64,000 nt of DNA from IMGVR_UViG_3300025770_000870:62001-126000, one strand, 5' to 3'. Shown: positions 12,596 through 51,588, counted from the stretch's first letter. Made by a program: numbers and translations. Notes: generated by a model not told the origin, from the letters alone.

Positions 12596-13150
12596 ATGAA
12601 ACACCTTATAAGATATAATGAGTCTGATGAGTCTGATGATAATAAATTAGATATTAAGTATATAGAATCTTGCTTTGCTGAATTAATAGATAATTATATT
12701 GATTATAATAATGGTTATTTAGGAAGAAATAGTTGGACGAAAAATCCTATTACTAGTAGTTTAGAATATGGTGCTGAGGATTATTACAGTAATGAAAGTT
12801 GGTCTATTAGGTTATTACTTGAAGGAACACCAACAAATATGTCTGATGATCTATCCGATGGTAGTATAAAAACATCAGGGGTTCATAGATCATCATATAG
12901 AATTGGATATAAGTTAGGTAAGTTAGTCAAGGACGCAAATGAAAAACTTGAGATATTAAAGGAAATTGAAGTGGGTGTTAAACGAATTAAGGAAAAATAC
13001 CCATCATATAATATAGATTTCAATAAACAATTTACACATAGTAAGGATACACAAACCACGATACAAGAATTTATAGTTGTTGGTATTAGTCAACCACATT
13101 CAGATCGTTTACGACAGGTTAAATATAACTGGAAAGACGCGAATATTTAA
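12596..13150 (+). CDS. Leader-tagged paralog-family protein
   Basis: MKHLIRYNES; YIESCFAELID; TAATATATA at 12581-12589. Confidence 0.75.
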   Translation: MKHLIRYNESDESDDNKLDIKYIESCFAELIDNYIDYNNGYLGRNSWTKNPITSSLEYGAEDYYSNESWSIRLLLEGTPTNMSDDLSDGSIKTSGVHRSSYRIGYKLGKLVKDANEKLEILKEIEVGVKRIKEKYPSYNIDFNKQFTHSKDTQTTIQEFIVVGISQPHSDRLRQVKYNWKDANI

Positions 13151-13500
13151 AAGATAATTGTATTAATTTTATATCCTCTTTCAAACATTTTATAAGCTCT
13201 CAGAAAATCTTCTTGTTTCGTAAATAAGCTTATTAAATAGTTTTCAAATTCTACACCAGTGTAACCATCCATGAGCGAGTTTCTAATTCCTCCTACCTTT
13301 ATAACAATACCTTCATAATCAAAGACAGAATGATCAGTGTCTATATCAATACTAAAATTACTCAAAAGGAATCCTATGTGTTTCGCTTTTTCTAAGTATT
13401 CTAATCCGATTTTATCATCATAATCACCACACATTATATCATTGAGGTTTTCACTTAAACCTCCAAAAGTTTTAAATGGTGTTTTATCCAAATGTTTCAT
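13147..13500 (-). CDS. Hypothetical protein with C-terminal tag variant
   Basis: Ends ERGYKINTIIF; TATATTTG promoter at 13593-13600. Confidence 0.6.
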   Translation of the reverse strand: MKHLDKTPFKTFGGLSENLNDIMCGDYDDKIGLEYLEKAKHIGFLLSNFSIDIDTDHSVFDYEGIVIKVGGIRNSLMDGYTGVEFENYLISLFTKQEDFLRAYKMFERGYKINTIIF

Positions 13501-13624
13501 TTAATAAATTTACTGTGTATAATATAATCGACATACACATCAACCATATTAAAAACTTGTTAATATTTTCTTTATACTTTTTATACATATCACAAATATA
13601 AGGATTATTATTAATATATAACAT

Positions 13625-14056
13625 ATGAAACATCTCAAAAGAATAAATGAGTTATATCTAACATCAGATGTGTCTAGTGTTATAGATGATATATTATTGG
13701 AGATTAATGATATACCTAAGTTTGTTGGTCTTAATTGGAATCATACGGATCGTTTGGGTCGGGCATCTGAACATAGTTTTTTGGTTATTATTAAGTTGAG
13801 TGAGGGTATAGAAGATGGTATGGATTATGGTGTTGGTTTAGATGAGGAAATAACAGAAACTATTAAAAGGTTATTAGAATTTATGACAAGCAATCGATAT
13901 GAATACTTGATGGAATTTGGAACAGATAACATACCACCTGGTACTTCAAAAAAAGAATTAAGTGATTATATTAGGAAGTTTGAATATAGTGAATTATCTG
14001 ATAATGATTTAACTATGTGGGTGGATGAATTTATAAGAATAACTTTTACAAAATGA
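13625..14056 (+). CDS. Leader-tagged paralog-family protein
   Basis: MKHLKRINE; VIDDILLEIND; TAATATATA at 13612-13620. Confidence 0.75.
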   Translation: MKHLKRINELYLTSDVSSVIDDILLEINDIPKFVGLNWNHTDRLGRASEHSFLVIIKLSEGIEDGMDYGVGLDEEITETIKRLLEFMTSNRYEYLMEFGTDNIPPGTSKKELSDYIRKFEYSELSDNDLTMWVDEFIRITFTK

Positions 14057-14472
14057 GATACATGAAAACATATGAATCATTTGGGAATCCCTTTGGTAAC
14101 AGTCCGAGGGATAGACGAATCAAGTTGTACAGTTTCCCCAGGGCAACACTTTTACTTGAAATCGAGGATATTCTAAGAGAGTTAGAGGATAATAATATAC
14201 GTGTTGAGGTATATTTTTGGGATGGTGTTGAGGTTTTCTTAACCAGTAGAAACGAACATGAAGTTAGAAGAGGCTTACTAGCTCCTGATACATTCCCATA
14301 TGAGGTTATAAAACCTAATATAGAGCATCTAGTTTCTTTCTTAGAAGAAATTGGATATAAAATTAAAAGTATTCATAATATTGTTAATCTTGAATCAAGA
14401 GGATCAATAACTCAATATCCTGATTTGGATGGTGAAGAAATAGGTAGATTGGAATTTAGATTTATCAAATAA
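14053..14472 (+). CDS. Leader-tagged paralog-family protein
   Basis: MRYMKTYESF; IEDILRELED; ATGA overlap. Confidence 0.75.
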   Translation: MRYMKTYESFGNPFGNSPRDRRIKLYSFPRATLLLEIEDILRELEDNNIRVEVYFWDGVEVFLTSRNEHEVRRGLLAPDTFPYEVIKPNIEHLVSFLEEIGYKIKSIHNIVNLESRGSITQYPDLDGEEIGRLEFRFIK

Positions 14473-14653
14473 TTAATTACTTTATAAACAATACAACATT
14501 TAATTTTTAGTTCCATTTTTCTAATTCATATTCCTTTAAGGTTATCCAAATACCAAGTATTCTATGTTGTAAAGCTCTAGTAGTAACTAAACAAGTTGCC
14601 TTGCGGTTTCGGATAGTAAAAATATTTTTAGTTTTTATTCTATACATAGTTAA

Positions 14654-15013: not shown

Positions 15014-15070
15014 TAAACCAAATCTTTTATATCTTTGAATAAAAATAATAATCACCCCTCGATAATATCA

Positions 15071-15274: not shown

Positions 15275-15355
15275 AGTTTATATTTTTTAATTATTACTTT
15301 ATTTATATACAAATGTAAGGATATTATCATACTAATACAAATTAATATATACTTT

Positions 15356-15496
15356 ATGGAAGGAATGAGGAAAATTATTATGTTTAGTCTTGTAATGATA
15401 GTGTTAAGTTCTTGTGGAGTACTCAAGGGTGGTAAAGGTAAATGTGAGTGTGAGGACTGGGGTCGAAGAGAGTCTGAAAAGACTGATAGTGTATGA
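15356..15496 (+). CDS. Small lipoprotein
   Basis: MRKIIMFSLVMIVLSSC lipobox; TAATATATA at 15343-15351. Confidence 0.6.
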   Translation: MEGMRKIIMFSLVMIVLSSCGVLKGGKGKCECEDWGRRESEKTDSV

Positions 15497-15882
15497 AATA
15501 CCTAAAAAAATTCAATGATATAAGATTCGAAATAGAAGAATCTGATTCAACTAAAATACGTATGTATGATGTTGATGAAAAAGTTGGTTATTCATCAGTA
15601 ACTATAAAGGATAATATTTTTGATAAATGGAATTTACATGATGATTTAGAAGTTGATCCGATAAAAAATACTAAAAGCTTATACATTCTAGGAATATCAA
15701 TGAGGAATAGGAGAACAGGTTATGGTTCTAATTTAATAAACTATATTGAGGAATATGCTAATAAGAAAGGATGTGAATACATCACACTAAGTTCTATTAC
15801 CGATGCTTTGGGGTTCTGGAAAAAAATGGGATATGAAGTTTATAGTATGGGTGATTACTATTCAATGTATAAGAAGTTATAA
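15493..15882 (+). CDS. Leader-tagged GNAT acetyltransferase
   Basis: MKYLKKFND; RRTGYGSNLI acetyl-CoA motif; ALGFWKKMGY. Confidence 0.85.
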   Translation: MKYLKKFNDIRFEIEESDSTKIRMYDVDEKVGYSSVTIKDNIFDKWNLHDDLEVDPIKNTKSLYILGISMRNRRTGYGSNLINYIEEYANKKGCEYITLSSITDALGFWKKMGYEVYSMGDYYSMYKKL

Positions 15883-15905
15883 ACCTTATTGATATTGCTT
15901 ATATA

Positions 15906-16229: not shown

Positions 16230-16238
16230 ATCTATTGG

Positions 16239-19300: not shown

Positions 19301-19735
19301 TTAAAGTTTACGATATTTTAATATTATATCTATATGTGATGTTTCCATATCTTTGATATGTTTTAATTTGGAATATGAATGTTTTTTATTCATACGAGAG
19401 TCATCTATATGATTAAATTCTCTATATGTTAACTTCCAAAGTTCTAACCCATATTCTTTCTGTAAGAGTGGTAATGCGAAGTTAAGAACTCCCATAACAT
19501 CATAGACTTTAAATCTACTAAAACTTGGTAAGGTATATCTTTCTACAATCTTATCGATTTCTATTTTAACGTGTGGTGTCAATTCCATATTCATTTTAAC
19601 TTCAACAGTAAACCCCAAATCACTTAATTCGATTAGAGATTCCTCCACAACATATTTTAAATCTGTTGAAGTATCCTTCTTTTTCTTAAAGAAAGAAAAG
19701 TTATTAAATAATTCATATGTTTTGATATACTCCAT
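19301..19735 (-). CDS. Leader-tagged paralog-family protein
   Basis: MEYIKTYELF; VEESLIELSDLGFTVEV; TAATATATA at 19740-19748. Confidence 0.75.
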   Translation of the reverse strand: MEYIKTYELFNNFSFFKKKKDTSTDLKYVVEESLIELSDLGFTVEVKMNMELTPHVKIEIDKIVERYTLPSFSRFKVYDVMGVLNFALPLLQKEYGLELWKLTYREFNHIDDSRMNKKHSYSKLKHIKDMETSHIDIILKYRKL

Positions 19736-20466: not shown

Positions 20467-20486
20467 TTTATATATTAATATATAAA
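20467..20486. promoter_or_regulatory. Perfect 20-bp palindrome containing back-to-back TAATATATA boxes
   Basis: TTTATATATTAATATATAAA fills the 25-bp gap between divergent ATGs. Confidence 0.75.
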
Positions 20487-20488: not shown

Positions 20489-20935
20489 ATGAAATACTTG
20501 AGAACTTATAAAATATTTGAGTCTGTTGATTTGGTTGAGTTGGAATCAACCGTGGATGATATATCTTTAGAGATAAAGGATTTGGGCTATGAAGTAATGA
20601 TTTATATGCTAAGGAACTTCGTTAGTGTTGAAGTAATATCAAAAAGGTCAGAAAATCTTTATTCTAAATGGACGCAAGATAGGGAGAATTTTTCAAAGAA
20701 GGAATATAATAAGTGTTCTGAGGTTTTGGATAGATTGGAAGATTTTTTGAAATCGGAAGGTATGTTAATTTATTCAAAGAACTTAATTCGGGTATCACAA
20801 GTTAATTACTCAAATTATTCACAATTCGAACATGGTGTATGTGATCAAGGGTATGATAGCACAGGTACTTGGGAATATAACGTGATGTATCATCTTCCAC
20901 CTCCAAAACCTTTATATCCAAGAAAAATAAAGTAA
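20489..20935 (+). CDS. Leader-tagged paralog-family protein
   Basis: MKYLRTYKIFES; VDDISLEIKDLGYEV. Confidence 0.75.
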   Translation: MKYLRTYKIFESVDLVELESTVDDISLEIKDLGYEVMIYMLRNFVSVEVISKRSENLYSKWTQDRENFSKKEYNKCSEVLDRLEDFLKSEGMLIYSKNLIRVSQVNYSNYSQFEHGVCDQGYDSTGTWEYNVMYHLPPPKPLYPRKIK

Positions 20936-20940
20936 TAGTT

Positions 20941-21636
20941 ATGATAAATTGGCAAGGGTATGAGTGGTTGAGTGAAGAGAGATGGGGAGAATATCACCCA
21001 AATAAACCTATTGTTTGGTATGATCCATCAGCTATTGAGATAGACTCCCTCGATGTTCTAAAACTAAAATGTAGGTCTAATCCAAAAACTTTTGATGATA
21101 TTATCATCCCAATTGGTACCGGTTTGATATCTTGTACTACTGAGTTTGGATATGGTAAGTTTGAGATATGTGCTAAGTTACCAGATGGTCCTTTTGTTTG
21201 GCCAGCATTTTGGATGTGGTCTTTTGATTCTTGGCCACCAGAAATAGATGTATTTGAGGGTTATACTAATAAAAGGAATAGTTATTTTAATTGGAGTTTA
21301 CGTTCTTTACTTGGTAAATTCTGGGCAGTTAATTCGAATATACATCTTGGATCATCACCAGATAATTATATGATGGGTGCAAAATCTCATTGGTTGGGTT
21401 GGAAAAGTCCAAGTAAAGTTTTTAATAAGTATGGTGTAATTTGGACAGATAAAGAAATAAAAATATTATTTAATGATAGAGTTGTTAGGGAAATAAAAGA
21501 TGAAAAGGTTATAATCCAGTTACGGGGTAAGAAGATGAATGTTATAATAAATAATTCTATACAAGATGGTTATATGGAAACTGATAGACCGGCTCATGAA
21601 ATGATAGTTAAATATTTCACATACGAAAAATACTAA
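20941..21636 (+). CDS. GH16 glycoside hydrolase (laminarinase-like)
   Basis: YGKFE..AKLP.G..WPAFW...EIDVFE (ExDxxE). Confidence 0.9.
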   Translation: MINWQGYEWLSEERWGEYHPNKPIVWYDPSAIEIDSLDVLKLKCRSNPKTFDDIIIPIGTGLISCTTEFGYGKFEICAKLPDGPFVWPAFWMWSFDSWPPEIDVFEGYTNKRNSYFNWSLRSLLGKFWAVNSNIHLGSSPDNYMMGAKSHWLGWKSPSKVFNKYGVIWTDKEIKILFNDRVVREIKDEKVIIQLRGKKMNVIINNSIQDGYMETDRPAHEMIVKYFTYEKY

Positions 21637-21716
21637 CCAAATAATTCATTGGTTAAGTCTTTGTTTTTGTGTGGTAAAGAATAAGATGTTGATAATACAA
21701 ATTAATATATACAATA

Positions 21717-21923
21717 ATGAAAAATTTGAAAGAGAGTGATAGTTGGGCTGGTTCTAATTACGCTTATAACCAAACAATAGTACCTAGAAATACTGAGATA
21801 TTTAAAGTAAATGATCCTATATCCTATAAGTGTGATAGTTGTGAGTTTGAATTTTTCACTTATACTAAAGAGCAAGACTACTGTACCCTTTGTGGATCAG
21901 AAGATATAAAACAAATAAATTAA
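21717..21923 (+). CDS. Zn-ribbon protein with short leader
   Basis: CDSC...CTLCGS; TAATATATA at 21703-21711. Confidence 0.65.
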   Translation: MKNLKESDSWAGSNYAYNQTIVPRNTEIFKVNDPISYKCDSCEFEFFTYTKEQDYCTLCGSEDIKQIN

Positions 21924-21925
21924 TA

Positions 21926-22282
21926 ATGAAATTAAAAAGATTTAATGAGGATATCACAGATGATTCTGTTATACCAACAGGAATTCCCAATCCAGAGAAT
22001 GATATGTTCCAAACAAGTATATTTGCTGATATAGAAGGTGATTTGGAAGATATGTCACCCGGAGAAGCAGAAGATTATCTATCAAGTATAATTGTTTTCT
22101 GTAACCAACAGATTAAAGGCATCATTGAGGAAGAAGTGGATGAAGAAGAAGTGGATGAAGAAGATGAAAGAAGATATGATGATAGAGAAAATTATGGTAC
22201 AGATGATGAATCAAGATATGATGATACAGTAGCACGTAACATCAGAAATTATAAATACGGAAACCATCCTGATGAAAAATAA
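21926..22282 (+). CDS. Leader-tagged acidic protein
   Basis: Start MKLKRFNED; EEEVD repeats. Confidence 0.7.
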   Translation: MKLKRFNEDITDDSVIPTGIPNPENDMFQTSIFADIEGDLEDMSPGEAEDYLSSIIVFCNQQIKGIIEEEVDEEEVDEEDERRYDDRENYGTDDESRYDDTVARNIRNYKYGNHPDEK

Positions 22283-23999: not shown

Positions 24000-24307
24000 T
24001 ATATTTTTATGGATTTCCATACCTCCACGGGGTTATTTTTTTGTTCAACTTTGAAAACACTTTTAAATGGTGTTTTGAAAACTCTAACTGTTATACCTGT
24101 TTTTGAATTAGAAAATTCTTTGATTGATTTAAAATCATCTGTTCCATAAGAATATAAAGATTTGAATCTCTTGTCGATTTCGCCTTTTTTATTTATGCGA
24201 TTAATCAAATAACAAAAAGAGTTTGATTCTTTAATTCCTGTATAAAACCTAGTCATTACTAATCTACGTTTGGTATCTACTTTTGGGGAAAATTTTTTGT
24301 ATCTCAT
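23999..24307 (-). CDS. Basic hypothetical protein
   Basis: TATCTTTG 4 nt before ATG. Confidence 0.65.
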   Translation of the reverse strand: MRYKKFSPKVDTKRRLVMTRFYTGIKESNSFCYLINRINKKGEIDKRFKSLYSYGTDDFKSIKEFSNSKTGITVRVFKTPFKSVFKVEQKNNPVEVWKSIKI

Positions 24308-24335
24308 AATACAAAGATACGGAAAATAATCCGAA

Positions 24336-25061
24336 TTACAAAATCGACTTTATCTCATTTACTTTATCCTCACTCAATAACTTAGACATAACTCTCCAAA
24401 ATATATCATCATTATCAGCCATTGATTCTGATAATCTAAAAATAGGAATTGGTTTTTCTATATTTTTTAATTCCATCTCAAAGATATAAAACAACATAAA
24501 TTCTTTAGATATCAAAATAACTTCTGGATTATCAACTAACAATTTATCATAATTATCACTTTTCATTATATCAAATGATGCTGGGTAAAAATGTTCGATA
24601 AGTCTGTTATATAAATGGAATCCAATAGATGCTTTAGTATCACCAAATAATTTAGTATTAGCTTCTATTCTAGATGTTCTATTTATAACAGTCCCAACAT
24701 AAGTATTTAATAAACCTGTTCCAACTTCCCATATGTTACCGGAGTCAGATCCTATACCAAATGATGCTTTTACTCCAGTGATACTAACAAAGTCATTACA
24801 TAATTTATTTAAAGCTCTGTGTGTTGATAATAGATAAGCGTATCCTTCAATATAATTTTTATCTGATAAAAATATTGTTAATACTCCATCACCGGTTGTA
24901 CCCATATGTATATCATCGGATATAATATTAGCTATATCTGATTGTATTTGATAATAAGACTCGATGAAATTTAAAAATTCATTGGATTGTTTATATTGAA
25001 AGTTTTCAAATAACCCACTAAAATTCCTGATATCTGTTAATATTGTAGTCGCTGATTTCAT
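24336..25061 (-). CDS. Stand-alone class III adenylate/guanylate cyclase domain protein
   Basis: LTDIRNFS, GDGVL, G..IN.TSRIE motifs; TATCTTTG promoter. Confidence 0.85.
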   Translation of the reverse strand: MKSATTILTDIRNFSGLFENFQYKQSNEFLNFIESYYQIQSDIANIISDDIHMGTTGDGVLTIFLSDKNYIEGYAYLLSTHRALNKLCNDFVSITGVKASFGIGSDSGNIWEVGTGLLNTYVGTVINRTSRIEANTKLFGDTKASIGFHLYNRLIEHFYPASFDIMKSDNYDKLLVDNPEVILISKEFMLFYIFEMELKNIEKPIPIFRLSESMADNDDIFWRVMSKLLSEDKVNEIKSIL

Positions 25062-28394: not shown

Positions 28395-29861
28395 ATGAAA
28401 TCTTACACAGAGTTTCTTTTAGAAAAAAAGGAAAATGATTTATTGGAATTACTCAATGAGGCTGTATTTATTATGGCACCGGAAATGAGTGATATAATAG
28501 ATGAGTTATATAATAGTGAAGAGGGTTATTCTAAAATAGCTAAATGTTTCTATATGTTAGATATGGAAGACATAGACACTCAGATAAGTTATCTAAACTT
28601 AGGAGATGATAATTCAACTATAACATTCCTAAAACCAGAAAAAGTTGATAAGATAAGAAAGGAAAAAGAATGGACAATAAATGATGTGTGGGTAAATGTC
28701 AAAGGTAATGGTATTAGAGTTGGGAGGTTAACTAGAAAGGTTATCGAACTTTATAATAAATCAAGAAGTGTAAAAACCACTAAAGCGACTAATTCTTCCA
28801 TAAGTGATGTTAAATTTACAGATCAAGAAATCGAGAAGTTTGTAAATGCTTACAAATCTCAATATGATTTTAATAATAATATAATGGATAATTTTAGTTT
28901 AGTATCAAGTGAAGATGATATTAAAGAAGCTTATTTAGAAGATAATTATTATAGTGGTGATGGTACACTTGGTGGTTCTTGTATGAGAAACGATGATGCT
29001 CAAAATTACCTTGAATTATATCATAATACATCAGTAAATCTATTGGTATTGAAATCAGCAAATAATAAAATTATGGGAAGATCTGTTATATGGACCCTAA
29101 GTGATGGTAGGAAATTTATGGATAGAACTTACACGAATAGAGATTCTGATGTTGATTTGTTTATAAAATATGCTCAAGAGAATAGATATATTTATAAAGC
29201 GGAACAAGACTCACGAGCCCACACTTATTTTTATGAACCTGGTGATAATTATAACAACAGCTCATTTATACAATTGGAATCAAAAGTTTATGAATTTAGT
29301 ATTGGTAATAATGGGGGCGAGGAATTTCCTTATATGGACACAATGAAATATCTTTACTGGGAAGAAGGTATTATACGCAATTATAAAGATAAATCAAATT
29401 ATTATATCAAATTGGAAGATGTTGATGGTTGGTGTGATTGTGCTGAATGTGATGGCGAAGGTAGAGAAGAATGTAATAAGTGTGATGGTGATGGTAACAA
29501 TACATGTGAAGATTGTCGTGGGTATGGGTATGAGGAATGTAGTAGATGTAATGGATATGGTGATAATATGTGTAAAGAATGTGATGGTGATGAGGAAGTT
29601 GAGTGTGAAGAATGTGATGGTGAAGGTTATATAGATGGGGAAACGTGTGGTACTTGTGGTGGATCCAGTAAGGTTACTTGTGTTACTTGTGATGGATATG
29701 GTACAGAAAATTGTTCAAATTGTGATGGTGATGGTAGAGAAGAATGTGGTGAGTGTAATAACAACGGAACAATTGAATGTGAGACTTGTGATGGTGATGG
29801 TGAAGGTGAATGTAGTAGATGTGGGGGATATTCTCATAGAGATTTTTTTGTTAGTAATTGA
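28395..29861 (+). CDS. Leader-tagged protein with SCM/FMDRxY domain and 12 DnaJ-type CxxCxGxG repeats
   Basis: MKSYTEFLLE; GTLGGSCM; GRSVIW..DGRKFMDR; paralog of ORF 39078. Confidence 0.8.
   Translation: MKSYTEFLLEKKENDLLELLNEAVFIMAPEMSDIIDELYNSEEGYSKIAKCFYMLDMEDIDTQISYLNLGDDNSTITFLKPEKVDKIRKEKEWTINDVWVNVKGNGIRVGRLTRKVIELYNKSRSVKTTKATNSSISDVKFTDQEIEKFVNAYKSQYDFNNNIMDNFSLVSSEDDIKEAYLEDNYYSGDGTLGGSCMRNDDAQNYLELYHNTSVNLLVLKSANNKIMGRSVIWTLSDGRKFMDRTYTNRDSDVDLFIKYAQENRYIYKAEQDSRAHTYFYEPGDNYNNSSFIQLESKVYEFSIGNNGGEEFPYMDTMKYLYWEEGIIRNYKDKSNYYIKLEDVDGWCDCAECDGEGREECNKCDGDGNNTCEDCRGYGYEECSRCNGYGDNMCKECDGDEEVECEECDGEGYIDGETCGTCGGSSKVTCVTCDGYGTENCSNCDGDGREECGECNNNGTIECETCDGDGEGECSRCGGYSHRDFFVSN
29694..29730. 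repeat. 37-bp perfect inverted repeat with 39245-39281
   Basis: GGATATGGTACAGAAAATTGTTCAAATTGTGATGGTG, in frame in both Zn-finger paralogs. Confidence 0.85.
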
Positions 29862-33043: not shown

Positions 33044-33921
33044 AACACTTAACAACACATAACGAAGGTTTATTCAATTGGAGAAGAAATAGGGGTAAGG
33101 AACCTTTACATAGAGGATTCTCTAAAGATGATATGTACATATCCAGTGGTATTGGATATAAGAAAAGGATTGGTACATCACAATTAAAGGATTCTAATAC
33201 TTTTTACTCTATCCGTTTTCCTGATATGTCTTTAAATATGATAAAACAACACATAGTTTCTAAGAGAGATATTCATTCTAAAGGTATATTTGGTGACTTT
33301 GGTAGTTATAGAACAGACGGGCCTCGATATAGAGAAAAGAGTTGGGTTAAGAGCACATCTGTTTGGTATGATTGTGGGAATATATTTAACTCTCTTAGAA
33401 ATATATCAGATCAATGTGGGTATAGTTTGAATCAGTCTGTTCATGTTACATCTACACAAAAAGATACTAAGATAGTAGAAATAGTAAACTTTTCTTTTTA
33501 TAAATTAACTGGTATTTTATCAGATGGTATTGATGAATGTTTAACACTTTTATATAAGGTTGAAGAAGATGATAATTATTATCAGATAGGTCAGATAGAA
33601 AAAATAGAAGATAGTCCAGAAAGAAATATAGTGGATGAGGTTATAGAGGAAAATTTCTTGGAACTTATGGATGATGGTTTAATTACCTTTAAATCAGAGG
33701 AAATAAAAATAAAGGGTGTTGTTAATTATAAATGTTATGTTAAAGTATCAAAAGATATGACACCACAAGTTCTATTTAAGATATCAGAATGTTTATTAGT
33801 TGCTGCTCAAAGGTTGAATGATATTAACATTGATATTGATATAAAGTCTATGCAACATTCAGAAGATAGAAATACAAGAACTGGTACAACTGATATTGAG
33901 TTTACTGCTATTCAAAGATAA
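33040..33921 (+). CDS. Leader-tagged protein with C-terminal paralog-family domain
   Basis: MKHLTTHNEG; IEENFLELMDDG. Confidence 0.75.
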   Translation: MKHLTTHNEGLFNWRRNRGKEPLHRGFSKDDMYISSGIGYKKRIGTSQLKDSNTFYSIRFPDMSLNMIKQHIVSKRDIHSKGIFGDFGSYRTDGPRYREKSWVKSTSVWYDCGNIFNSLRNISDQCGYSLNQSVHVTSTQKDTKIVEIVNFSFYKLTGILSDGIDECLTLLYKVEEDDNYYQIGQIEKIEDSPERNIVDEVIEENFLELMDDGLITFKSEEIKIKGVVNYKCYVKVSKDMTPQVLFKISECLLVAAQRLNDINIDIDIKSMQHSEDRNTRTGTTDIEFTAIQR

Positions 33922-34453
33922 ATCCTAAATCTCTTAGTCTATCACCGTGGTCAAAAGCAAATCCATTTTTATTCATTTGATTTAATTCTTCAATCGAAAA
34001 CCATCTAGCTGATTGAGCATCATCCATACCGATTATATTGTTACCCATATCTCCAGGAATCTCAACAGTAAACGAATGAGCTTCTACCCATGATGTATCA
34101 CTATTTCTAGGATCTCTATTCTTATCATCAAAAACTCCTAATAGTTTGAATTTAGAATCTTCTATTTCCGATAGGTCTAATCCCGTCTCTTCTAGAATTT
34201 CTCTTTTACCAGCTTGTAACTCAGTCTCTAACCCAGGTTCCCATTCATTACCCCGATTAGCAGTAGTATCAACAAAACCACCAGGAATACTCCATTTATT
34301 TGGTTCTGCCTTAACAGACTCACCTCTTTGTATTAATAATACTTGTTGTGTACCATCAACTGTTCTAGTTACGATAGTATCAGCGGTTGGGTTTGGACCA
34401 ACATATCTTAATGATGGCTTGTCGAATGACTCAAATGTTTTTACAAATTTCAT
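33908..34453 (-). CDS. Leader-tagged NUDIX hydrolase (ADP-ribose pyrophosphatase-like)
   Basis: MKFVKTFESF; WSIPGGFVD...REILEETGL; RDPR; DDA; AFDH. Confidence 0.92.
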   Translation of the reverse strand: MKFVKTFESFDKPSLRYVGPNPTADTIVTRTVDGTQQVLLIQRGESVKAEPNKWSIPGGFVDTTANRGNEWEPGLETELQAGKREILEETGLDLSEIEDSKFKLLGVFDDKNRDPRNSDTSWVEAHSFTVEIPGDMGNNIIGMDDAQSARWFSIEELNQMNKNGFAFDHGDRLRDLGFIFE

Positions 34454-35325: not shown

Positions 35326-36339
35326 TTATTTTTCTACTTTTACTCTAAAGTACAATTCATAAACATCAAAGACTTTAGTAACATCTCTTGAAAATCTTTT
35401 TGGTTCAGTAACAATCTTAAATGTTTTTTGTTCTTCATACCAATAAAATATTGTTATTAATATATTACCATCATTATCAATAATCTTATATCCCCGCTCG
35501 GCACTATGTGATTGTATATGTGGTCTAGATGCTTTAACTGGTACTAATTTTAATTCATGGCTTTCGATTTTACTGTAAAACTTAGTAACCCAAGTGTTGA
35601 ATAAAGACATTAGTTGTTCTCTATTATCAGATTTACCACTATCCATAGCAGTTTTTATAGCCCATTCCGATGGTAGTAAATCATTATTTAATATTCTTAT
35701 TTCATTTGGTAAAGTTCTAAGTTGTGCTTTATATTCATAAGTATCACCACTTGGTCTTCTCCAAGTAGAATCGAAACTTAATGAATACCCTTCTATTCGA
35801 GCACCATCTAGGTCACGGTACCTAACACCTCTGTGGTGATGGTCATCCACTATCTGTAAAGATTTTAATATATCTTCTACACCTTCATAATTAATAAAGG
35901 AATCACTTTGCTCTCTATCGAAAATTATTCTTATTGTAATATGATTTATATTTCTAATTGAATAATACACACTGGCTTTACCATCAAGCATTGATTTTAT
36001 CCTATGTATTGAGTTATAGATAGAGTCTATTATATTTAACTCTGATTCGAAATAAACACTCCCATTCCAATTCCTAACATCACCAGATCCACCATCAGAT
36101 ATAGATTTATCATTAATCGTTCTATCAAGTTCTATTTCGATACCTGGATAATAATCTTTAACATCTCTAGTTCTTCTGTGTGGGTAACCTGTTGATAGTG
36201 ATATGTAAACAGGATCTATCATATAAGTATATCCCAAATCAACCATATCGATAAATATTTCCTCGATATTATCATCATCAGCATTTATTCTTGATAACAA
36301 GTCTTCTTTACTTTCTAATATTTGGGAAAATTTTCTCAC
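35326..36339 (-). CDS. Leader-tagged paralog-family protein (long form)
   Basis: GTG start RKFSQILES; IEEIFIDMVDLGY; TAATATATA at 36345-36353. Confidence 0.75.
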   Translation of the reverse strand: MRKFSQILESKEDLLSRINADDDNIEEIFIDMVDLGYTYMIDPVYISLSTGYPHRRTRDVKDYYPGIEIELDRTINDKSISDGGSGDVRNWNGSVYFESELNIIDSIYNSIHRIKSMLDGKASVYYSIRNINHITIRIIFDREQSDSFINYEGVEDILKSLQIVDDHHHRGVRYRDLDGARIEGYSLSFDSTWRRPSGDTYEYKAQLRTLPNEIRILNNDLLPSEWAIKTAMDSGKSDNREQLMSLFNTWVTKFYSKIESHELKLVPVKASRPHIQSHSAERGYKIIDNDGNILITIFYWYEEQKTFKIVTEPKRFSRDVTKVFDVYELYFRVKVEK

Positions 36340-41603: not shown

Positions 41604-41858
41604 ATGAGATATCTGAGAACATACAAAAAGTTTACGGAAAATGCTTACGTAGCAGCATCCACTGCTGGTTCTGGTAGTGTAGTTGCTGCTCAACCTGGAT
41701 CCTTACCTGGTACATTCGGAACAGATGGGTCTGGTGATATTGGGTTTACCTTTAAGAAGGAGAAAAGAAAAAAAGGTGATGTTACCGAGGTTAGTGATTT
41801 GAGAGACCTAGAAGAGGTTGAAATTGAGAAGGTTGATGATATAAAAATCAAAAATTAA
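41604..41858 (+). CDS. Leader-tagged low-complexity protein
   Basis: MRYLRTYKKFTEN; TAATATATA at 41589-41597. Confidence 0.7.
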   Translation: MRYLRTYKKFTENAYVAASTAGSGSVVAAQPGSLPGTFGTDGSGDIGFTFKKEKRKKGDVTEVSDLRDLEEVEIEKVDDIKIKN

Positions 41859-44411: not shown

Positions 44412-44945
44412 ATGAAACATATAAAAAGATTTGATGAGGTTATTAAAGTCGATATTAAAGTCGGTGATACTGTCCTTGGTGGTCGATTTAAGAATAAGAA
44501 AACCCTTGTTAAGAAAATAGGTAAAAATAAAAAAGGTGATATAACTATTAATGATAAGCCTTTGCTTAAATATAGAATCATAAAAGAAGATGTTGATATT
44601 AAAGATGTTGTTACTTATTACTTATCACATTTAATAGATGATGGATTCGTAGCTTATGATGGAGATGAATTTATAAGAATTTTCAAACCAAAGTATGGTG
44701 ATGTTTATACTTATACGAATTTAATAGAATTTAATTTTGCTGAAATAGCTGGTGATATAATCAGGTTTGTTAATTCAGTGGACGATATTAAAAATATATC
44801 ATATATGACAATTGCTGAAAAACCAAAAGAGTATAAAATGCAAGGTGGTGGTGTGTTATTTGATAATTTGGAAAGAAATGTTATTGATATTAATAATTTA
44901 GAACAAGTCAATATGGATATGTATTCATTGACTATATTATTTTAA
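44412..44945 (+). CDS. Leader-tagged protein (KOW-like plus paralog-family domain)
   Basis: MKHIKRFDE; IKVGDTVLGGRFKNK; YLSHLIDDGF. Confidence 0.75.
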   Translation: MKHIKRFDEVIKVDIKVGDTVLGGRFKNKKTLVKKIGKNKKGDITINDKPLLKYRIIKEDVDIKDVVTYYLSHLIDDGFVAYDGDEFIRIFKPKYGDVYTYTNLIEFNFAEIAGDIIRFVNSVDDIKNISYMTIAEKPKEYKMQGGGVLFDNLERNVIDINNLEQVNMDMYSLTILF

Positions 44946-46043: not shown

Positions 46044-46445
46044 TTAAAAGTTTGTGTGTGCTACACCATCACCGAATGTAACATATTCCTTTTCTTTTTC
46101 TTTTGTAAAAGAAAGATATTTATCAATAGGATAATGTTCACGATCTTCGGTATCTTTTTCGAACCATTCTGATATTTTCATTAAGTCACGTATCCTCTCA
46201 ATTATATCTTTTAGGTTTGAAGAATCTGGTGTTTCCTTATATTCTTTCCATTGAATTCTAACAAATATTTGATCACTTTTGGGTAACATCTTACTAACAT
46301 TTATAGAAAATCCTTCGTCTTCCAATTCCATACAAATATCCTTTATCGTTTGTACCAAACAATCTGTTTCTTCGTTATCATATCCCATTCTACAAGGTTT
46401 GGAAACGTTTGAGTTAAATTCATTTATAGATTTTAGATATCTCAT
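46044..46445 (-). CDS. Leader-tagged paralog-family protein
   Basis: MRYLKSINEF; IKDICMELEDEGFSINV. Confidence 0.75.
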   Translation of the reverse strand: MRYLKSINEFNSNVSKPCRMGYDNEETDCLVQTIKDICMELEDEGFSINVSKMLPKSDQIFVRIQWKEYKETPDSSNLKDIIERIRDLMKISEWFEKDTEDREHYPIDKYLSFTKEKEKEYVTFGDGVAHTNF

Positions 46446-46963
46446 TTTTCGTAAGGAGCAAATATGTGTTCCCAGGGGATAATATCTTCTGTGTGATACA
46501 TAGCAATATCAAATCTAATACCATGTTCACCATCACCTTGAAATACCGAGGACTCTAAAGAAAAATTAAGTATTTTGAATTTATACCCAAAATCTTTTAT
46601 TTTAATTAACGAATCAGAAAACTCATTAAAGAATTCAATTGTACTAGACATTTGTTTATCATTTACATCTCTAATTGATGATGATAAATCATCAAATCTT
46701 AATCTAAGTGTATATCCTTTATAAAGAGGTTTATCTATGTAATTTATTCTATCTCTAACTTCAAAGTTTTCATCAACTAAAGTATGTGTTGAGTTTTTAA
46801 TTCCTATAATTTTACCACCTAAATCAACCAATTCTAAGAAAAATTCTTTTAACTCACCATCTCTATTATATTCAGATCTCATGATAGCTAATTCAAACCA
46901 ACCATCTCCCTCGCCCGATTCGTTTATCATCTCTACATTATTATAATTCTTTAAGTATTTCAT
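46442..46963 (-). CDS. Leader-tagged paralog-family protein
   Basis: MKYLKNYN..MINES; LKEFFLELVDLG; TAATATATA at 46968-46976. Confidence 0.75.
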   Translation of the reverse strand: MKYLKNYNNVEMINESGEGDGWFELAIMRSEYNRDGELKEFFLELVDLGGKIIGIKNSTHTLVDENFEVRDRINYIDKPLYKGYTLRLRFDDLSSSIRDVNDKQMSSTIEFFNEFSDSLIKIKDFGYKFKILNFSLESSVFQGDGEHGIRFDIAMYHTEDIIPWEHIFAPYEK

Positions 46964-47246: not shown

Positions 47247-47265
47247 ATATCAATATGTTTGGTTA

Positions 47266-49060: not shown

Positions 49061-49093
49061 CTGGACTAAAAGATTTTTATCTCACCTAACATA

Positions 49094-51106
49094 TTATTTA
49101 TTATTGTTATTGAATTTCTCAAATTTAGCGATAATCTTTTTATTTGTATTATCGATAGTCATTAAGCTTTTCCTATCCGTTTTCATTCCTTTTCCAGCAC
49201 CGGCCCTAATAAATTCTTCTTTTGTTACTGTTGATGGTGTACCATCGTTATTAACTAATTGATATTCGAAATTTTCATTAGTATCTTGTCCTAATAACTT
49301 AACACCTTTGGTATCATAATCAACATCCTCTCCAGATCTAGCAGTATCTATCTTTTCTTTAAGAGCATTTACAAAATCTCTAGCTATCTTCTTTAATACA
49401 TCAACATATTTATCTGTATCATAAGCTATTTTCATCATAGCTTTATTATATTTTAATAGATTAAGACCAGCGATATTTGTAATTGATGGGTGACCTCCAC
49501 TATTTCTTATTACAATTTCCCATACTGGAATTTTGAGATTATTTAATAGTGTTTTTTGTTCGTAAGATAAATCTTTATGTAAAACATTCATAGCTTCTTC
49601 TAATCCATCTTCTTTAATATCAACATTAAGAATAGTTCTACCCTCTTTCTTAAATACACAATCAGAATAAAAAGCTTCTAAATCAGAATATTTAAATCCA
49701 ACACCTTCGTATGAATCACCTTCATCCTTCTTCATTTTTTTCCAATCTTGTGAATTTTCAAATTCATTCTTAATTGATTCTAATGATATATAATACTTAC
49801 TCATCATTGGTTCATACTTAGCTAATACTTCTTTAGAGATTTCTCCTAAGTTAATATCTTTAAGTATTTTCTCCTTAAATGGATTACAAGAAACTTGTAC
49901 AAGACCCATTGGCCAAACAATACAGATAAATTCCGCATCCGGGAAATTCTTAAATGGTGTATATCTATCATAAGAACCTGGTTTAATCATACTACCACCT
50001 CCATATTGCATAAGTATTTTATAATCTTCATCAATATGAATACCCTTTATAGAACTCTTACCATTGAGAGCTTTTCTTCCTAACCAAGTAACGCTATAAA
50101 CATTTTTCGGTTTATCTTCAATATAATTTTTATCAAATAATCTATCAACATACTTAACATACTCTTCGTTAGATATTCCTAGCTTCTTAGCTAATTCAAC
50201 ATCTTGAGAGGCTGGCATTCTGTGTATATTTTTTAGGATGCTTAATTCGGTTCTACCAATTTCCATAACATCACCACTTTCACTTTCAACGAATCCGTAA
50301 TCCTTCATTCTCTCGATATAGTTAGTAAGGTTTGTTTTTATTTCTTCTGGTGTTGCTAATCTACCAAGCTTATCGCTTGTTTTTGCATTATTAATATAAT
50401 GTCTAATATTGTTAAACATTGAGTATAAACTCGCAGTTGAGTCTAATAATAAACACTCAAGTATATTCTTATTTATGTGATCTCTTTTACCATCTAATGA
50501 TTTAACAGTTATTCTTTTATTCTTATAAGCTAATAATAATCTATTAACCACTAATCCCATCATAAATCTATTCTTTTGTGGTGTTTCTGCCTTTTCATAT
50601 TTGAATATAGAATTTTGAACATCTTCTGGCTTAATATTATTTCTCAAGAAATCTGCTGAATCAATTGTTTGAATCATTTTTATATCTTGTGCCGTGAATA
50701 TATCTGAATATGAAACTTCACCTGATATAATCTCAACATTTGATCTAGCTGATTTGAAATATGTTGATTCTGTGTCCTCAGCACCAACTTGTTTATCATG
50801 ATGATCCGATTGTATATGGAACATTGGTTTACCGTGTGCGAAATCAACTAAAACTTTTAATGTATCAGGTCTTCCGTTTTTAACAGCATACTCTAATCCA
50901 CCATATTGAATGATATGACAATCAACTGTTTCTATTTGATAGTAATTTTTTAAGAATACACTCATAGCTAATGCTGATGTTACTCCATCTAAATCTTTGT
51001 GAAAGTATATCTCACATTCTTTATATCCTTTAGTTATAGCTTTTATGTTTCTTAAACCTACTTCCTCGTTTACAAACTCAGTATATTTTTTCATATTATT
51101 TTTCAT
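49094..51106 (-). CDS. Leader-tagged DHH-family phosphoesterase with inserted wHTH-like segment
   Basis: MKKYTEFVNE; HKDLDGV.S, LVDF, SDHH, GGH; TAATATATA at 51134-51142. Confidence 0.8.
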   Translation of the reverse strand: MKNNMKKYTEFVNEEVGLRNIKAITKGYKECEIYFHKDLDGVTSALAMSVFLKNYYQIETVDCHIIQYGGLEYAVKNGRPDTLKVLVDFAHGKPMFHIQSDHHDKQVGAEDTESTYFKSARSNVEIISGEVSYSDIFTAQDIKMIQTIDSADFLRNNIKPEDVQNSIFKYEKAETPQKNRFMMGLVVNRLLLAYKNKRITVKSLDGKRDHINKNILECLLLDSTASLYSMFNNIRHYINNAKTSDKLGRLATPEEIKTNLTNYIERMKDYGFVESESGDVMEIGRTELSILKNIHRMPASQDVELAKKLGISNEEYVKYVDRLFDKNYIEDKPKNVYSVTWLGRKALNGKSSIKGIHIDEDYKILMQYGGGSMIKPGSYDRYTPFKNFPDAEFICIVWPMGLVQVSCNPFKEKILKDINLGEISKEVLAKYEPMMSKYYISLESIKNEFENSQDWKKMKKDEGDSYEGVGFKYSDLEAFYSDCVFKKEGRTILNVDIKEDGLEEAMNVLHKDLSYEQKTLLNNLKIPVWEIVIRNSGGHPSITNIAGLNLLKYNKAMMKIAYDTDKYVDVLKKIARDFVNALKEKIDTARSGEDVDYDTKGVKLLGQDTNENFEYQLVNNDGTPSTVTKEEFIRAGAGKGMKTDRKSLMTIDNTNKKIIAKFEKFNNNNK

Positions 51107-51144
51107 ATCAGTATAATAATTTTCTTTATTCTTTATATATTAAA

Positions 51145-51588
51145 TTAGACAACGTATTTTATTTTTATGTCTTCTATTCGATGCATAAATATTTTAAGTT
51201 GATATCCCACTACCTTTGACTTCGAAATATACCATCCAAAATCACCCAATCTATCATTTGTGGTTTCTATTATTTCTTTAAATTCACTAGATTTTATATA
51301 ATCTTCTAATTCTTCTTTTTGTCTTCCGACATCATTAGCATTCCGTTGAACCAATTCCTGAAAGACACATCTTATATAAGGTATAGATTCTATAACCATT
51401 TTACCATCCTCTTTATCAACTGATGTATCTCTTTGGATAAGATTTTTATCAAAGTATGTTGATGTATTATATCCAGCATCCGATATATCAACAAACATAT
51501 CCTCAATGTATTCCTTTGTTAATCCATTATAATGTTCTTCCTTTGGTACTAACATTTCCCAACCTTCGAATGTCTTTAAATATTTCAT
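51145..51588 (-). CDS. Leader-tagged paralog-family protein
   Basis: MKYLKTFEG; IEDMFVDISDAGY. Confidence 0.75.
   Translation of the reverse strand: MKYLKTFEGWEMLVPKEEHYNGLTKEYIEDMFVDISDAGYNTSTYFDKNLIQRDTSVDKEDGKMVIESIPYIRCVFQELVQRNANDVGRQKEELEDYIKSSEFKEIIETTNDRLGDFGWYISKSKVVGYQLKIFMHRIEDIKIKYVV

What the first reader, a model, noticed from the sequence alone, without database searches (positions are those of the whole stretch)
12596..51588. Dispersed ~11-member paralog family (I-x-D/E-x-F/L-x-E/D-L-x-D-x-G) found only on leader-tagged genes
Seen: the helix motif recurs at 12596 (IESCFAELID), 13625 (IDDILLEIND), 14053 (IEDILRELED), 19735 (VEESLIELSDLG), 20489 (VDDISLEIKDLG), 33040 (IEENFLELMDDG), 36339 (IEEIFIDMVDLG), 44412 (YLSHLIDDG), 46445 (IKDICMELEDEG), 46963 (LKEFFLELVDLG) and 51588 (IEDMFVDISDAG), plus a pseudogene at 11376. 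Several share a later helix (I.RL..FM/L...GY). Copies are highly diverged, on both strands and not clustered. Inference: a diversifying small alpha/beta scaffold of packaged proteins, as expected for anti-defence or host-takeover effectors, or a head-core binding module.
Basis: partly seen in the sequence, partly recalled or inferred. Interest (0 to 1): 0.72.

Follow-up and report, generated by a model that had tools for sequence, protein, structure and literature searches.

The report
Fast-evolving tagged protein family in megaphage
A huge uncultured phage of Bacteroidetes carries about 30 very divergent copies of one small, unannotated alpha/beta domain, each behind a conserved N-terminal tag resembling the peptide phage T4 uses to load proteins into its capsid, so they may be injected proteins, though packaging is not shown.

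Summary
The motif is real and far above chance: 23 ORFs match against 2.7±1.5 in shuffles, and 14 against 0.3 among leader-tagged ORFs. The coordinates given are gene starts, or gene ends on the minus strand.

An HMM built only from foreign homologues recovers 13625, 14053, 19301, 20489, 46044 and 51145 (E 2e-6 to 3e-15). 44412 and 35326 join through subfamily profiles. 33040 is probable. 46442 is supported only at fold level. 12596 is unsupported. The relic at 11376 exists.

The family is larger than stated: 18 copies in this 242-kb record, about 30 in the roughly 545-kb genome it belongs to, 18 and 33 in two published 634- and 642-kb phages, and 817 clusters in 1.8 billion proteins. None has a Pfam match or a name.

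AF2 gives alpha-beta-beta-alpha-beta-beta with a disordered leader. No solved structure matches significantly.

One copy is 40% identical to its orthologue while its neighbours are 81-93%.

The leader resembles the T4 capsid-targeting sequence, and the genome has a T4-type capsid protein, portal and maturation protease.

Best reading: internal-protein-like cargo. Packaging is untested.

The parts
13625..14056 (+). Family member, 143 aa. Leader MKHLKRINE; helix-1 motif IDDILLEIND at nt 13682-13711.
   Evidence: Foreign-domain HMM E 1.8e-8. hhalign 90.7%.
14053..14472 (+). Family member, 139 aa, in tandem with 13625 (4-nt overlap). Leader MRYMKTYESF; motif at nt 14161-14190.
   Evidence: HMM E 3.4e-11. 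hhalign 96.8%. Leave-one-out E 3e-6.
19301..19735 (-). Family member, 144 aa. Leader MEYIKTYELF; motif at nt 19613-19648.
   Evidence: HMM E 1e-9. hhalign 92.5%.
20489..20935 (+). Family member, 148 aa. Leader MKYLRTYKIFES; motif at nt 20552-20587.
   Evidence: HMM E 2.1e-14. hhalign 97.2%. Linked to the out-of-window cluster by iterated search.
46044..46445 (-). Family member, 133 aa. Leader MRYLKSINEF; motif at nt 46311-46346. This is the member that was modelled.
   Evidence: HMM E 3.2e-15. AF2 model: H25-43, E46-52, E60-66, H75-91 at pLDDT 70-87, with residues 1-21 disordered.
51145..51588 (-). Family member, 147 aa. Leader MKYLKTFEGW; motif at nt 51472-51507.
   Evidence: HMM E 1.6e-6. 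Its orthologue in LR745206 is 40% identical while the flanking genes are 81-93%.
44412..44945 (+). Family member, 177 aa, with about 65 extra N-terminal residues. Degenerate motif YLSHLIDDG at nt 44619-44645.
   Evidence: Paralogue of record ORFs 20740-21180 and 21664-22107: phmmer 7e-5, iterated 7e-35. Family HMM alone gives 0.04.
35977..36276 (-). N-terminal family domain (aa 22-121) of the 337-aa ORF 35326-36339. Degenerate leader (M/V)RKFSQILES; motif at nt 36232-36267.
   Evidence: A 5-sequence subfamily profile matches the family profile at 91.5%, E 8.5e-7. A paralogue in LR745206 (locus L016) carries the canonical leader MKYLKAYKIFES.
33637..33849 (+). Probable C-terminal family domain (aa 200-270) of the 293-aa ORF 33040-33921. 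The leader MKHLTTHNE is 200 aa upstream; motif at nt 33643-33678.
   Evidence: hhalign 61%, E 8e-5 over 69 columns. HMM best domain 0.002.
46442..46963 (-). Member at fold level only, 173 aa, in tandem with 46044. Motif at nt 46817-46852.
   Evidence: The sequence match is limited to leader plus helix. The AF2 model has the same alpha-beta-beta-alpha-beta-beta order. It shares 11 of its top-50 structural neighbours with the 46044 model.
12596..13150 (+). Unproven member, 184 aa. It has the leader and a partial motif IESCFAELID, but no D-x-G turn.
   Evidence: HMM E above 10 and hhalign 0.7%, the same as negative controls. Related to record ORF 24252-24641 (phmmer 0.002). Only weak Atlas leads to the same fold class.
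11287..11376 (-). Decayed relic: a leader with an in-frame stop at codon 6, MKYIS*YKLFESINTLDIKYLFANISKSI*.
   Evidence: Direct translation. It resembles the N-terminus of 12596 (…LDIKYIESCFAELID).

Best explanation
Shown:
- The window is part of a roughly 545-550-kb uncultured megaphage of the Mahaphage type.
- It carries a lineage-specific, fast-diverging multigene family. The unit is a conserved, disordered N-terminal tag of 10-12 residues (consensus MKYLK[TK][FY][EN].F[ES]), a variable linker, and one small soluble domain ordered alpha1-beta-beta-alpha2-beta-beta.
In 223 foreign copies it reads [ILV]-K-D-I-[CLF]-L-[ED]-L-x-D-x-G-[FY].
- No conserved catalytic-type residues are evident in the alignments. 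Conservation is confined to the tag, alpha1 and alpha2.

Inferred:
- In the alpha1 motif the hydrophobic positions (1, 4, 5, 8) would face the sheet. The three conserved acidic positions (3, 7, 10) would then form an exposed stripe. This comes from helical periodicity, not from coordinates.
- The domain is therefore a non-enzymatic binding module with a shared handle and a variable surface.
- The tag works like the T4 capsid-targeting sequence. It takes the protein into the prohead core and is probably removed by the head maturation protease after the conserved Glu.
- The family would then be the counterpart of the T4 internal proteins: cargo delivered with the DNA, diversifying under pressure from host defence or takeover targets.
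For: Family reality
- The profile of 14 leaderless members finds 817 proteins at E<=1e-3 in 1.84 billion representatives. Many carry 2-5 tandem domains.
- An HMM built only from foreign domains recovers 19 ORFs of this record.
- Leave-one-out searches, with and without the motif, rank held-out members near the top of about 900 ORFs.
- Six-frame counts: 18 in G000, 19 in the overlapping 483-kb record with 7 shared, 18 in LR745206 and 33 in LR756502.

Fold
- Two independent AF2 models give the same element order.
- They share 11 of their top-50 neighbours among 48,161 chains.

Fast evolution
- The family member is 40% identical to its orthologue while its neighbours are 81-93%.
- A decayed relic shows that dead copies erode.

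Tag acts at the protein level
- Synonymous codons vary freely in the tag.
- It is predicted to be disordered.
- It has no hydrophobic signal or membrane segment.
- It also sits on NUDIX, lysozyme and GNAT proteins.
- Internal copies in fused multi-domain proteins are decayed: 30 of 90 retain a remnant.

Likeness to the T4 capsid-targeting sequence
- T4 ipI begins MKTFKEFTS and ipII/ipIII begin MKTYQEFIAE, read from AF158101. The family tag MKYLKTFES shares 5 of 9 positions with ipI.
- Two other window proteins begin MKSYTEFLLE and MKKYTEFVNE.
- The genome has a Gp23-type capsid protein, a portal and a head maturation protease.
- An 84-aa tagged protein continues, right after the tag's Glu, as a copy of the capsid protein segment that follows an I-N-E site.
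- T4 targeting and cleavage, and paralogue families of head ejection proteins in giant phages, are established (PMC5694885, citing Mullaney and Black 1996).
Against: - There are no virion proteomics, cleavage data or expression timing for this phage or any relative. All relatives are metagenomic.
- The residue three before the tag's conserved Glu is L/I only in the long form (K-L-F-E-S). In the short forms it is T or F, which does not fit the T4 rule.
- T4 gp61.1 also begins MKTFKEF and is annotated in the record only as a hypothetical protein, with no head role given. Such an N-terminus therefore does not prove packaging.
- The upstream TAATATATA motif precedes all kinds of genes, so it gives no timing.
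- The complex prediction with the protease/scaffold ORF gave no answer.
- The domain has no sequence similarity to T4 IPI-III.
- Fast divergence could also reflect weak constraint.
- About 46 tagged ORFs in 242 kb is far more cargo species than any known phage packages.
Confidence: 0.42

Rival explanations
1. The family is real but is not packaged. These are cytoplasmic host-takeover or anti-defence proteins made after infection. The conserved N-terminus serves another purpose, such as efficient initiation on near-leaderless mRNAs in a host without Shine-Dalgarno use, protection from N-terminal degradation, or recognition by a phage chaperone.
For: - Many tagged genes have TAATATATA only 4-6 nt before the ATG, which implies near-leaderless mRNAs.
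- Most leader residues (K, Y, L, I, F, N) are the ones encoded by A/T-rich codons.
- T4 gp61.1, annotated only as a hypothetical protein, begins MKTFKEF too.
- Small, fast-evolving, clustered phage genes are typical of early accessory regions.
Against: - The order of residues is conserved, not just the composition.
- G/C-ending synonymous codons are common. AAG is the majority codon at position 5, and TAC and CTA are frequent, so A/T richness is not what is selected.
- Several tagged genes lie inside operons with no promoter motif.
- The tag is conserved across phages whose domains share under 25% identity.
Confidence: 0.3
2. The family is a structural component of the head interior (core, inner body or filler) rather than a set of effectors. 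The conserved acidic helix binds the scaffold or a basic partner, and the many paralogues simply bulk out a very large capsid.
For: - Giant phages have large paralogue families of internal head proteins with no known activity, for example the 20-member SPN3US family B (PMC5694885).
- Tandem multi-domain versions occur.
- The conserved handle with variable remainder fits a structural role.
Against: - Structural parts that must fit together usually evolve more slowly than the 40% identity seen between otherwise 81-93% identical phages.
- Copy number varies from 18 to 33 between relatives.
- This cannot be separated from the main explanation without experiments.
Confidence: 0.15
3. There is no family. 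The motif is a chance or compositional recurrence of an acidic amphipathic helix in small acidic proteins of an AT-rich genome.
For: - Pairwise phmmer finds nothing among the eleven.
- Background proteins are also acidic: median pI 5.3 against 5.1 for the family.
- 12596 and, by sequence alone, 46442 match only over the helix.
Against: - Shuffles give 2.7 hits against 23 observed.
- A foreign-only HMM recovers the members at E down to 3e-15.
- Sixteen other tagged proteins used as negative controls score 1.4% or less.
- 817 database proteins match the profile.
- Similarity persists when the motif is removed.
Confidence: 0.03

Closest known systems
Phage T4 internal proteins IPI, IPII and IPIII with their capsid-targeting sequence
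   Same: - A short conserved N-terminal tag of similar sequence sits on otherwise unrelated small proteins: MKTFKEFTS and MKTYQEFIAE in T4 against MKYLKTFES here.
- Both genomes have a Gp23-type capsid protein and a head maturation protease.
- From my own knowledge of T4: the IPs are dispensable and polymorphic among T-even phages, and IPI* is an injected anti-restriction protein.
   Different: - There is no sequence similarity in the mature parts.
- There are about 30 paralogues of one domain here, against three unrelated proteins in T4.
- Roughly 46 or more tagged genes occur in 242 kb.
- Packaging and cleavage are untested.
- The residue three before the Glu does not always fit the T4 L/I-x-E rule.
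Paralogue families of head ejection or inner-body proteins in giant phages (SPN3US families A and B; phiKZ gp93-95, Pfam PF12699)
   Same: These are large, variable-number families of internal head proteins in jumbo phages, some processed by the prohead protease (PMC5694885).
   Different: - No Pfam match of any kind was found, including PF12699.
- The tag here is short and T4-like, unlike their propeptides of over 100 residues.
- The phage lineage is different (Bacteroidetes megaphages).
Circularly permuted ferredoxin-like (alpha-beta-beta)x2 domains: periplasmic domains of PilO, GspL/EpsL/XcpY and PulM/PulL, and ribosomal protein S6 permutants
   Same: Same order of secondary-structure elements. 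These are the best structural neighbours of both models.
   Different: - Z is at most 6.4 and Foldseek E is above 0.04, which is the level of a common arrangement.
- There is no sequence similarity.
- The family has no membrane anchor.
- No functional inference is justified.
phrog_1341 (unknown function)
   Same: 6 of 74 family sequences match it weakly, best E 9e-5.
   Different: The match in this genome covers about 44 model positions at E 1.5e-4. The PHROG has no annotation, so it is at most a distant relative.

Membership tests
The tagged (alpha-beta-beta)x2 domain family defined here (HMM of 239 foreign domains) | Significant match to a profile built without this genome's sequences | tested here: met
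   Met for 13625, 14053, 19301, 20489, 46044 and 51145 (E 2e-8 to 3e-15; 51145 at 1.6e-6). Met through subfamily profiles for 35326 (91.5%) and 44412. 33040 reaches 61%, E 8e-5. Not met for 46442 and 12596.
The tagged (alpha-beta-beta)x2 domain family defined here | Shared fold, alpha1-beta-beta-alpha2-beta-beta | tested here: inconclusive
   Only two members were modelled, 46044 and 46442. Mean pLDDT is 62 with cores at 70-87. They have the same element order and share 11 of their top-50 neighbours. No direct superposition was possible. 12596 was not modelled.
The tagged (alpha-beta-beta)x2 domain family defined here | N-terminal leader MK[YH][LI]K..[FY] | tested here: met
   All 19 ORFs of the record that the HMM recovers carry it (P about 3e-27). 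So do 115 of 171 foreign homologues by a strict regex. 35326 has a degenerate form.
T4-type capsid-targeted internal proteins | Conserved N-terminal tag of 10-20 residues similar to the T4 capsid-targeting sequence | tested here: met
   The T4 tags were read from AF158101. The family tag shares 5 of 9 positions with ipI. Two other window proteins fit M-K-x-Y-x-E-F-h-x-E. This is resemblance only.
T4-type capsid-targeted internal proteins | T4-type head module with a prohead maturation protease in the same genome | tested here: met
   PF07068 Gp23 at E 3.9e-24. Portal phrog_213 at 9e-58 and head maturation protease phrog_207 at 1.6e-30. The Pfam S77 protease match is below its cut-off.
T4-type capsid-targeted internal proteins | Tag removed by the prohead protease at an L/I-x-E site | not testable with these tools
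   Only indirect evidence exists. A tagged 84-aa protein aligns its tag Glu with an I-N-E site in the capsid protein's N-terminal region. Short-form tags lack L/I three residues before the Glu.
T4-type capsid-targeted internal proteins | Presence in the virion and ejection with the DNA | not testable with these tools
   No cultured relative is known. Tenacibaculum phage PTm1 has no member. The complex prediction gave no answer.
T4-type capsid-targeted internal proteins | Sequence homology of the mature protein to IPI, IPII or IPIII | tested here: not met
   The family HMM scores 0 bits or less against T4 ipI, ipII, ipIII and gp61.1.
PilO / GspL / GspM periplasmic domain | Significant structural or sequence similarity | tested here: not met
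   Best Z is 6.4 and Foldseek E is at least 0.046. There is no Pfam PilO or T2SSM hit.
PilO / GspL / GspM periplasmic domain | N-terminal membrane anchor | tested here: not met
   The maximum 19-residue Kyte-Doolittle mean is 1.12 or less in all eleven.
Any Pfam or annotated PHROG family | Match above the curated threshold | tested here: not met
   Pfam found none and the database homologues carry no precomputed Pfam domain. PHROGs gave only weak hits to unannotated families.

The most novel reading that the evidence does not exclude
A clade of Bacteroidetes megaphages has expanded the T4 capsid-targeting principle into a general loading system. A single N-terminal tag of about 10 residues would mark dozens of genes per genome for packaging into the giant capsid and co-injection. 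These include a roughly 30-member hypervariable binding-domain family plus NUDIX, lysozyme and GNAT enzymes. The result would be a pre-made protein arsenal far larger than any known phage carries, with the (alpha-beta-beta)x2 family as its fast-evolving inhibitor library.
Probability: 0.3. Interest if true: 0.85.

Novelty: new variant of a known kind. Interest (0 to 1): 0.62.

Why it matters
Megaphages are known only from metagenomes, and most of their genes have no annotation. This analysis defines one of their largest gene families: hundreds of clusters, 18-33 copies per genome, no Pfam match and no annotated PHROG. It also links the family to a simple, testable sequence tag.

If the tag is a capsid-targeting signal, it would allow the injected proteome of uncultured huge phages to be predicted from sequence alone. 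It would help explain part of what the extra capsid and coding capacity is for. It would also offer a portable tag for protein packaging in phages of Bacteroidetes. The hypervariable domains would then be candidates for new inhibitors of bacterial defence systems.

If the tag is not a targeting signal, the family still marks a fast-evolving interface between these phages and their hosts.

Tried and rejected
- Pairwise phmmer among the eleven, with leaders trimmed, found no mutual hits. Profiles were needed.
- Pfam and PHROGs on all members found nothing usable. phrog_1341 is a weak, unannotated match.
- Foldseek against PDB and AFDB clusters, and VIA-align wide, gave no significant match for either model. 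GGDEF/HATPase-like rows in the ESM Atlas have TM below 0.6 and were treated as a generic alpha/beta sandwich.
- tblastn of 46044 against 50,697 phage records gave no match. A consensus-like homologue hit only the two huge uncultured phages.
- The cultured Bacteroidetes jumbo phage PTm1, which I recall as having published virion proteomics (not checked here), has no family member, so it cannot serve as a proxy.
- Profile-profile comparison of the 46442 and 12596 subfamilies with the family matched only leader plus helix.
- Complex prediction of the protease/scaffold ORF with 46044 returned "no answer". I do not use it as evidence.
- Full-text search for the leader peptides and for megaphage paralogue families found no prior description.
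- I considered and rejected the idea that the helix motif is a protease site. It lies in the best-predicted helix of the fold (pLDDT about 87), and L/I-x-E is not consistently present.
- I considered and rejected a secretion or lipoprotein signal. There is no hydrophobic core.
- Net charge does not distinguish the family from the background.

Full report
**Context**

The window is bases 62,001-126,000 of a 241,918-bp linear IMG/VR virus record with 30% G+C. CheckV rates it 89% complete. It is a fragment of something larger:
- A 483,262-bp record overlaps it from about 62.4 kb onwards.
- The same proteins occur on a 551,101-bp contig.
- The only GenBank phages with DNA similarity are the 634,780-bp LR745206 and the 642,428-bp LR756502.

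Genomes of 634 and 642 kb are among the four largest reported in PMC7162821. That paper places all its largest genomes in the Mahaphage clade and predicts Bacteroidetes hosts for genomes over 634 kb. I matched the two records to that paper by length only.

The record encodes a Gp23-type major capsid protein (PF07068, E 3.9e-24), a portal, and a 713-aa protein whose first 340 residues are a head maturation protease.

**The observation**

All eleven coordinates are the starts of ORFs, or their ends on the minus strand. Every quoted peptide is present. The motif positions are listed under "parts".

Each ORF begins with a leader such as MKYLKTFE, MKHLKRINE or MRYLKSINEF. The motif follows 20-37 residues later, except in two cases:
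- 33040, where it starts at residue 202.
- 44412, where it starts at residue 70.

A strict regular expression for the motif hits 23 ORFs of the record, against 2.7±1.5 in residue shuffles. Among the 46 leader-tagged ORFs it hits 14, against 0.32.

The consensus of 74 sequences is F....I.D...RL..YL...G.

The "pseudogene" is a 90-nt relic on the minus strand starting at 11376. It is a leader with a stop at codon 6.

**Is it a paralogue family?**

Pairwise phmmer with leaders removed finds nothing among the eleven.

*Searches within the record*
- Iterated searches inside the record link 20489, 46044, 51145 and 13625 to a dense cluster of copies at 8-26 kb and at 40.7 kb of the record.
- They link 14053 to two of those copies.
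- They link 44412 to two others.

*Leave-one-out tests*
- Leave-one-out HMMs give E 3e-6 to 8e-5 for 14053, 19301, 20489, 46044 and 51145.
- The members were picked by the motif, so I repeated the test with the motif and close paralogues removed.
- Individual E-values become marginal. However, seven of the eleven window candidates still rank 1st-8th among about 900 ORFs (0-based ranks 1-7), so the similarity extends beyond the helix.
- The rest rank lower: 35326 rank 10, 33040 rank 14, 12596 rank 54 and 19301 rank 71. 19301 therefore rests on tests that include the helix.

*External evidence*
- A profile of 14 leaderless members finds 817 proteins at E<=1e-3 among 1.84 billion cluster representatives. 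Many have two to five tandem domains.
- None has a Pfam domain or a name.
- ESM Atlas neighbours are all viral hypothetical clusters.

*HMM built only from foreign sequences*

I built an HMM from 239 foreign domain instances, all under 60% identical to anything in this record. It recovers 19 ORFs of the record at E<1e-3. In the window:

| ORF | E-value |
|---|---|
| 46044 | 3e-15 |
| 20489 | 2e-14 |
| 14053 | 3e-11 |
| 19301 | 1e-9 |
| 13625 | 2e-8 |
| 51145 | 2e-6 |

hhalign gives the same order. Sixteen other leader-tagged proteins used as negative controls all score 1.4% or less.

*The doubtful four*
- **35326.** With orthologues and paralogues from the two huge phages, the N-terminal domain matches the family at 91.5% (E 8.5e-7) from helix 1 to helix 2. 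One paralogue has the canonical leader.
- **33040.** The C-terminal domain reaches 61% (E 8e-5).
- **46442.** It has ten orthologues, but its profile matches only leader plus helix.
- **12596.** It behaves like a negative control. Its only link is a weak one to another record ORF that has the motif.

**Fold**

- The AF2 model of 46044 used a 74-sequence alignment. It has a disordered leader (residues 1-21), then H25-43, E46-52, E60-66 and H75-91 at pLDDT 70-87, and two less certain strands.
- The model of 46442 gives H36-47, E50-63, E81-90, H102-124, E127-137 and E148-161. The order is the same: alpha-beta-beta-alpha-beta-beta.
- The two models share 11 of their top-50 neighbours among 48,161 PDB chains. 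About 0.05 would be expected by chance.
- The shared neighbours include S6 circular permutants, the periplasmic domains of XcpY, EpsL and PulL, and some phage neck or terminator proteins.

I take this as fold-level support for 46442. No match is significant (Z at most 6.4, Foldseek E at least 0.046). The fold class is a circularly permuted ferredoxin-like sandwich, and no function follows from it.

**Anatomy of the motif**

In 223 foreign copies the motif reads [ILV]-K-D-I-[CLF]-L-[ED]-L-x-D-x-G-[FY]. The main conservation figures are D3 85%, E/D7 86%, D10 91% and G12 72%.

Positions 1, 4, 5 and 8 are hydrophobic. Positions 3, 7 and 10 are acidic and spaced i, i+4, i+7. This fits an amphipathic helix with an exposed acidic stripe, capped by D-x-G. 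That reading is an inference from helical periodicity.

In the one orthologue pair inspected, the leader, helix 1, helix 2 and the strand after it are conserved, and the loops are not. I saw no conserved set of polar residues of the kind an active site would need.

**Evolution**

In a syntenic block shared with LR745206, 51145 is 40% identical to its orthologue. The three flanking genes are 82%, 81% and 93% identical. Copy number differs between relatives: 18, 33, and about 30 here.

Foreign multi-domain proteins carry decayed leaders between their domains. 30 of 90 non-first domains keep an [FYIV](N)ES remnant, against a 9% background, and some keep a complete internal MKHLKKFNES. They therefore look like fusions of tandem leader-plus-domain genes, and the leader appears to be maintained only at a true N-terminus.

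**The leader**

- 46 ORFs of the record carry it, 18 of them in the window.
- Synonymous codons vary freely, for example TAT/TAC, TTA/CTA/ATA and AAG/AAA. Conservation is therefore at the protein level.
- It has no hydrophobic core.
- It also heads a NUDIX hydrolase, a phage lysozyme and a GNAT acetyltransferase.

I read the T4 capsid-targeting sequences directly from the T4 genome: ipII and ipIII begin MKTYQEFIAE and ipI begins MKTFKEFTS. The family leader MKYLKTFES shares five of nine positions with ipI. Two other window proteins begin MKSYTEFLLE and MKKYTEFVNE, which fit the ipII/ipIII pattern.

An 84-aa tagged protein (41604-41858) continues straight after its leader Glu as a copy of the capsid protein segment that follows an I-N-E site (BLASTP E 4e-9). 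T4 protease sites are L/I-x-E. This suggests, but does not show, that the leader Glu is a maturation cleavage site.

**Mechanism**

*Shown:* a virus-specific, multi-copy, fast-diverging family of a small soluble domain behind a conserved, disordered N-terminal tag, in a phage with T4-type head assembly genes.

*Inferred:*
- The tag targets proteins to the prohead and is cleaved off.
- The domain is a binding module with a shared acidic handle and a variable surface.
- The proteins enter the host with the DNA.

The T4 internal proteins and the head paralogue families of SPN3US and phiKZ are the nearest precedents (PMC5694885).

*Against this reading:*
- There are no proteomic data.
- The residue three before the Glu is inconsistent.
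- T4 gp61.1 has the same kind of N-terminus and is annotated only as a hypothetical protein.
- The TAATATATA upstream motif precedes every kind of gene and gives no timing.
- The complex prediction gave no answer.

I put the packaged-cargo reading at about 0.4, a cytoplasmic accessory-protein reading at about 0.3, and a purely structural head-interior role at about 0.15.

**Verdict**

The family is larger and more clustered than described, and one listed member (12596) is unsupported. The family is not in Pfam, and PHROGs gave only weak hits to unannotated families. The full-text searches I ran found no description of it. The functional interpretation is plausible and testable but unproven.

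Noticed in passing
window 28395-29861 (+) and 49094-51106 (-): Two large proteins (488 and 670 aa) begin MKSYTEFLLE and, from Met5, MKKYTEFVNE. Both fit the T4 ipII/ipIII capsid-targeting pattern M-K-x-Y-x-E-F-h-x-E more closely than the family leader does.
   Followed up: partly
window 41604-41858 (+); record 200440-202170 (capsid protein): An 84-aa leader-tagged protein continues after its leader Glu as a copy of capsid protein residues about 44-70 (NAY..AS..G.G.VVAAQP.SL.G), BLASTP E 4e-9. In the capsid protein this segment follows an I-N-E site, a candidate T4-type maturation cleavage. A second small Gp23-like fragment lies at record 223673-223780.
   Followed up: partly
whole record; e.g. 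window 12581-12589, 13612-13620, 20476-20484: TAATATATA occurs 103 times in the record, and 78 of these lie within 40 nt upstream of an ORF. The gap to the ATG falls into two classes. A 4-6 nt gap is mostly seen on small genes, including many leader genes. A 19-29 nt gap is mostly seen on large genes, including the portal and fibre-sized ORFs. It looks like a phage promoter, and the short-gap class implies near-leaderless mRNAs.
   Followed up: partly
window 33908-34453 (-), 3929-4759 (+), 15493-15882 (+): The same N-terminal leader heads a NUDIX hydrolase, a phage lysozyme and a GNAT acetyltransferase. It therefore acts as a portable tag on unrelated folds.
   Followed up: partly
whole record versus IMGVR_UViG_3300027996_002186 (483 kb) and a 551-kb contig: The 242-kb record is a fragment. 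The 483-kb record overlaps it from about 62.4 kb on, and identical proteins sit on a 551-kb contig. The real genome is therefore about 545-550 kb, although CheckV calls the fragment 89% complete.
   Followed up: partly
record 8-26 kb (locus L001), outside the window: This is the main hotspot of the family, with 13 copies. Several are in head-to-tail tandem with 4-nt overlaps, and some are near-identical pairs such as 20740-21180 and 21664-22107.
   Followed up: yes
foreign homologues P0004, P0005, P0010, P0040: These proteins carry 2-5 tandem family domains separated by decayed or intact internal leaders, such as ...NEMKHLKKFNES.... They look like in-frame fusions of tandem genes.
   Followed up: partly
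window 56013-58130 (+), 58759-60357 (-), 5377-6762 (-): A 705-aa protein has a C39-like peptidase domain. A 532-aa protein has a baseplate gp5/VgrG-type OB domain. A 461-aa protein has a LamG/concanavalin-like domain. The window therefore also holds tail or baseplate genes.
   Followed up: no
record 198213-200354: The head maturation protease is the N-terminal 340 residues of a 713-aa ORF. The C-terminal half has no match and could be a fused scaffold.
   Followed up: no
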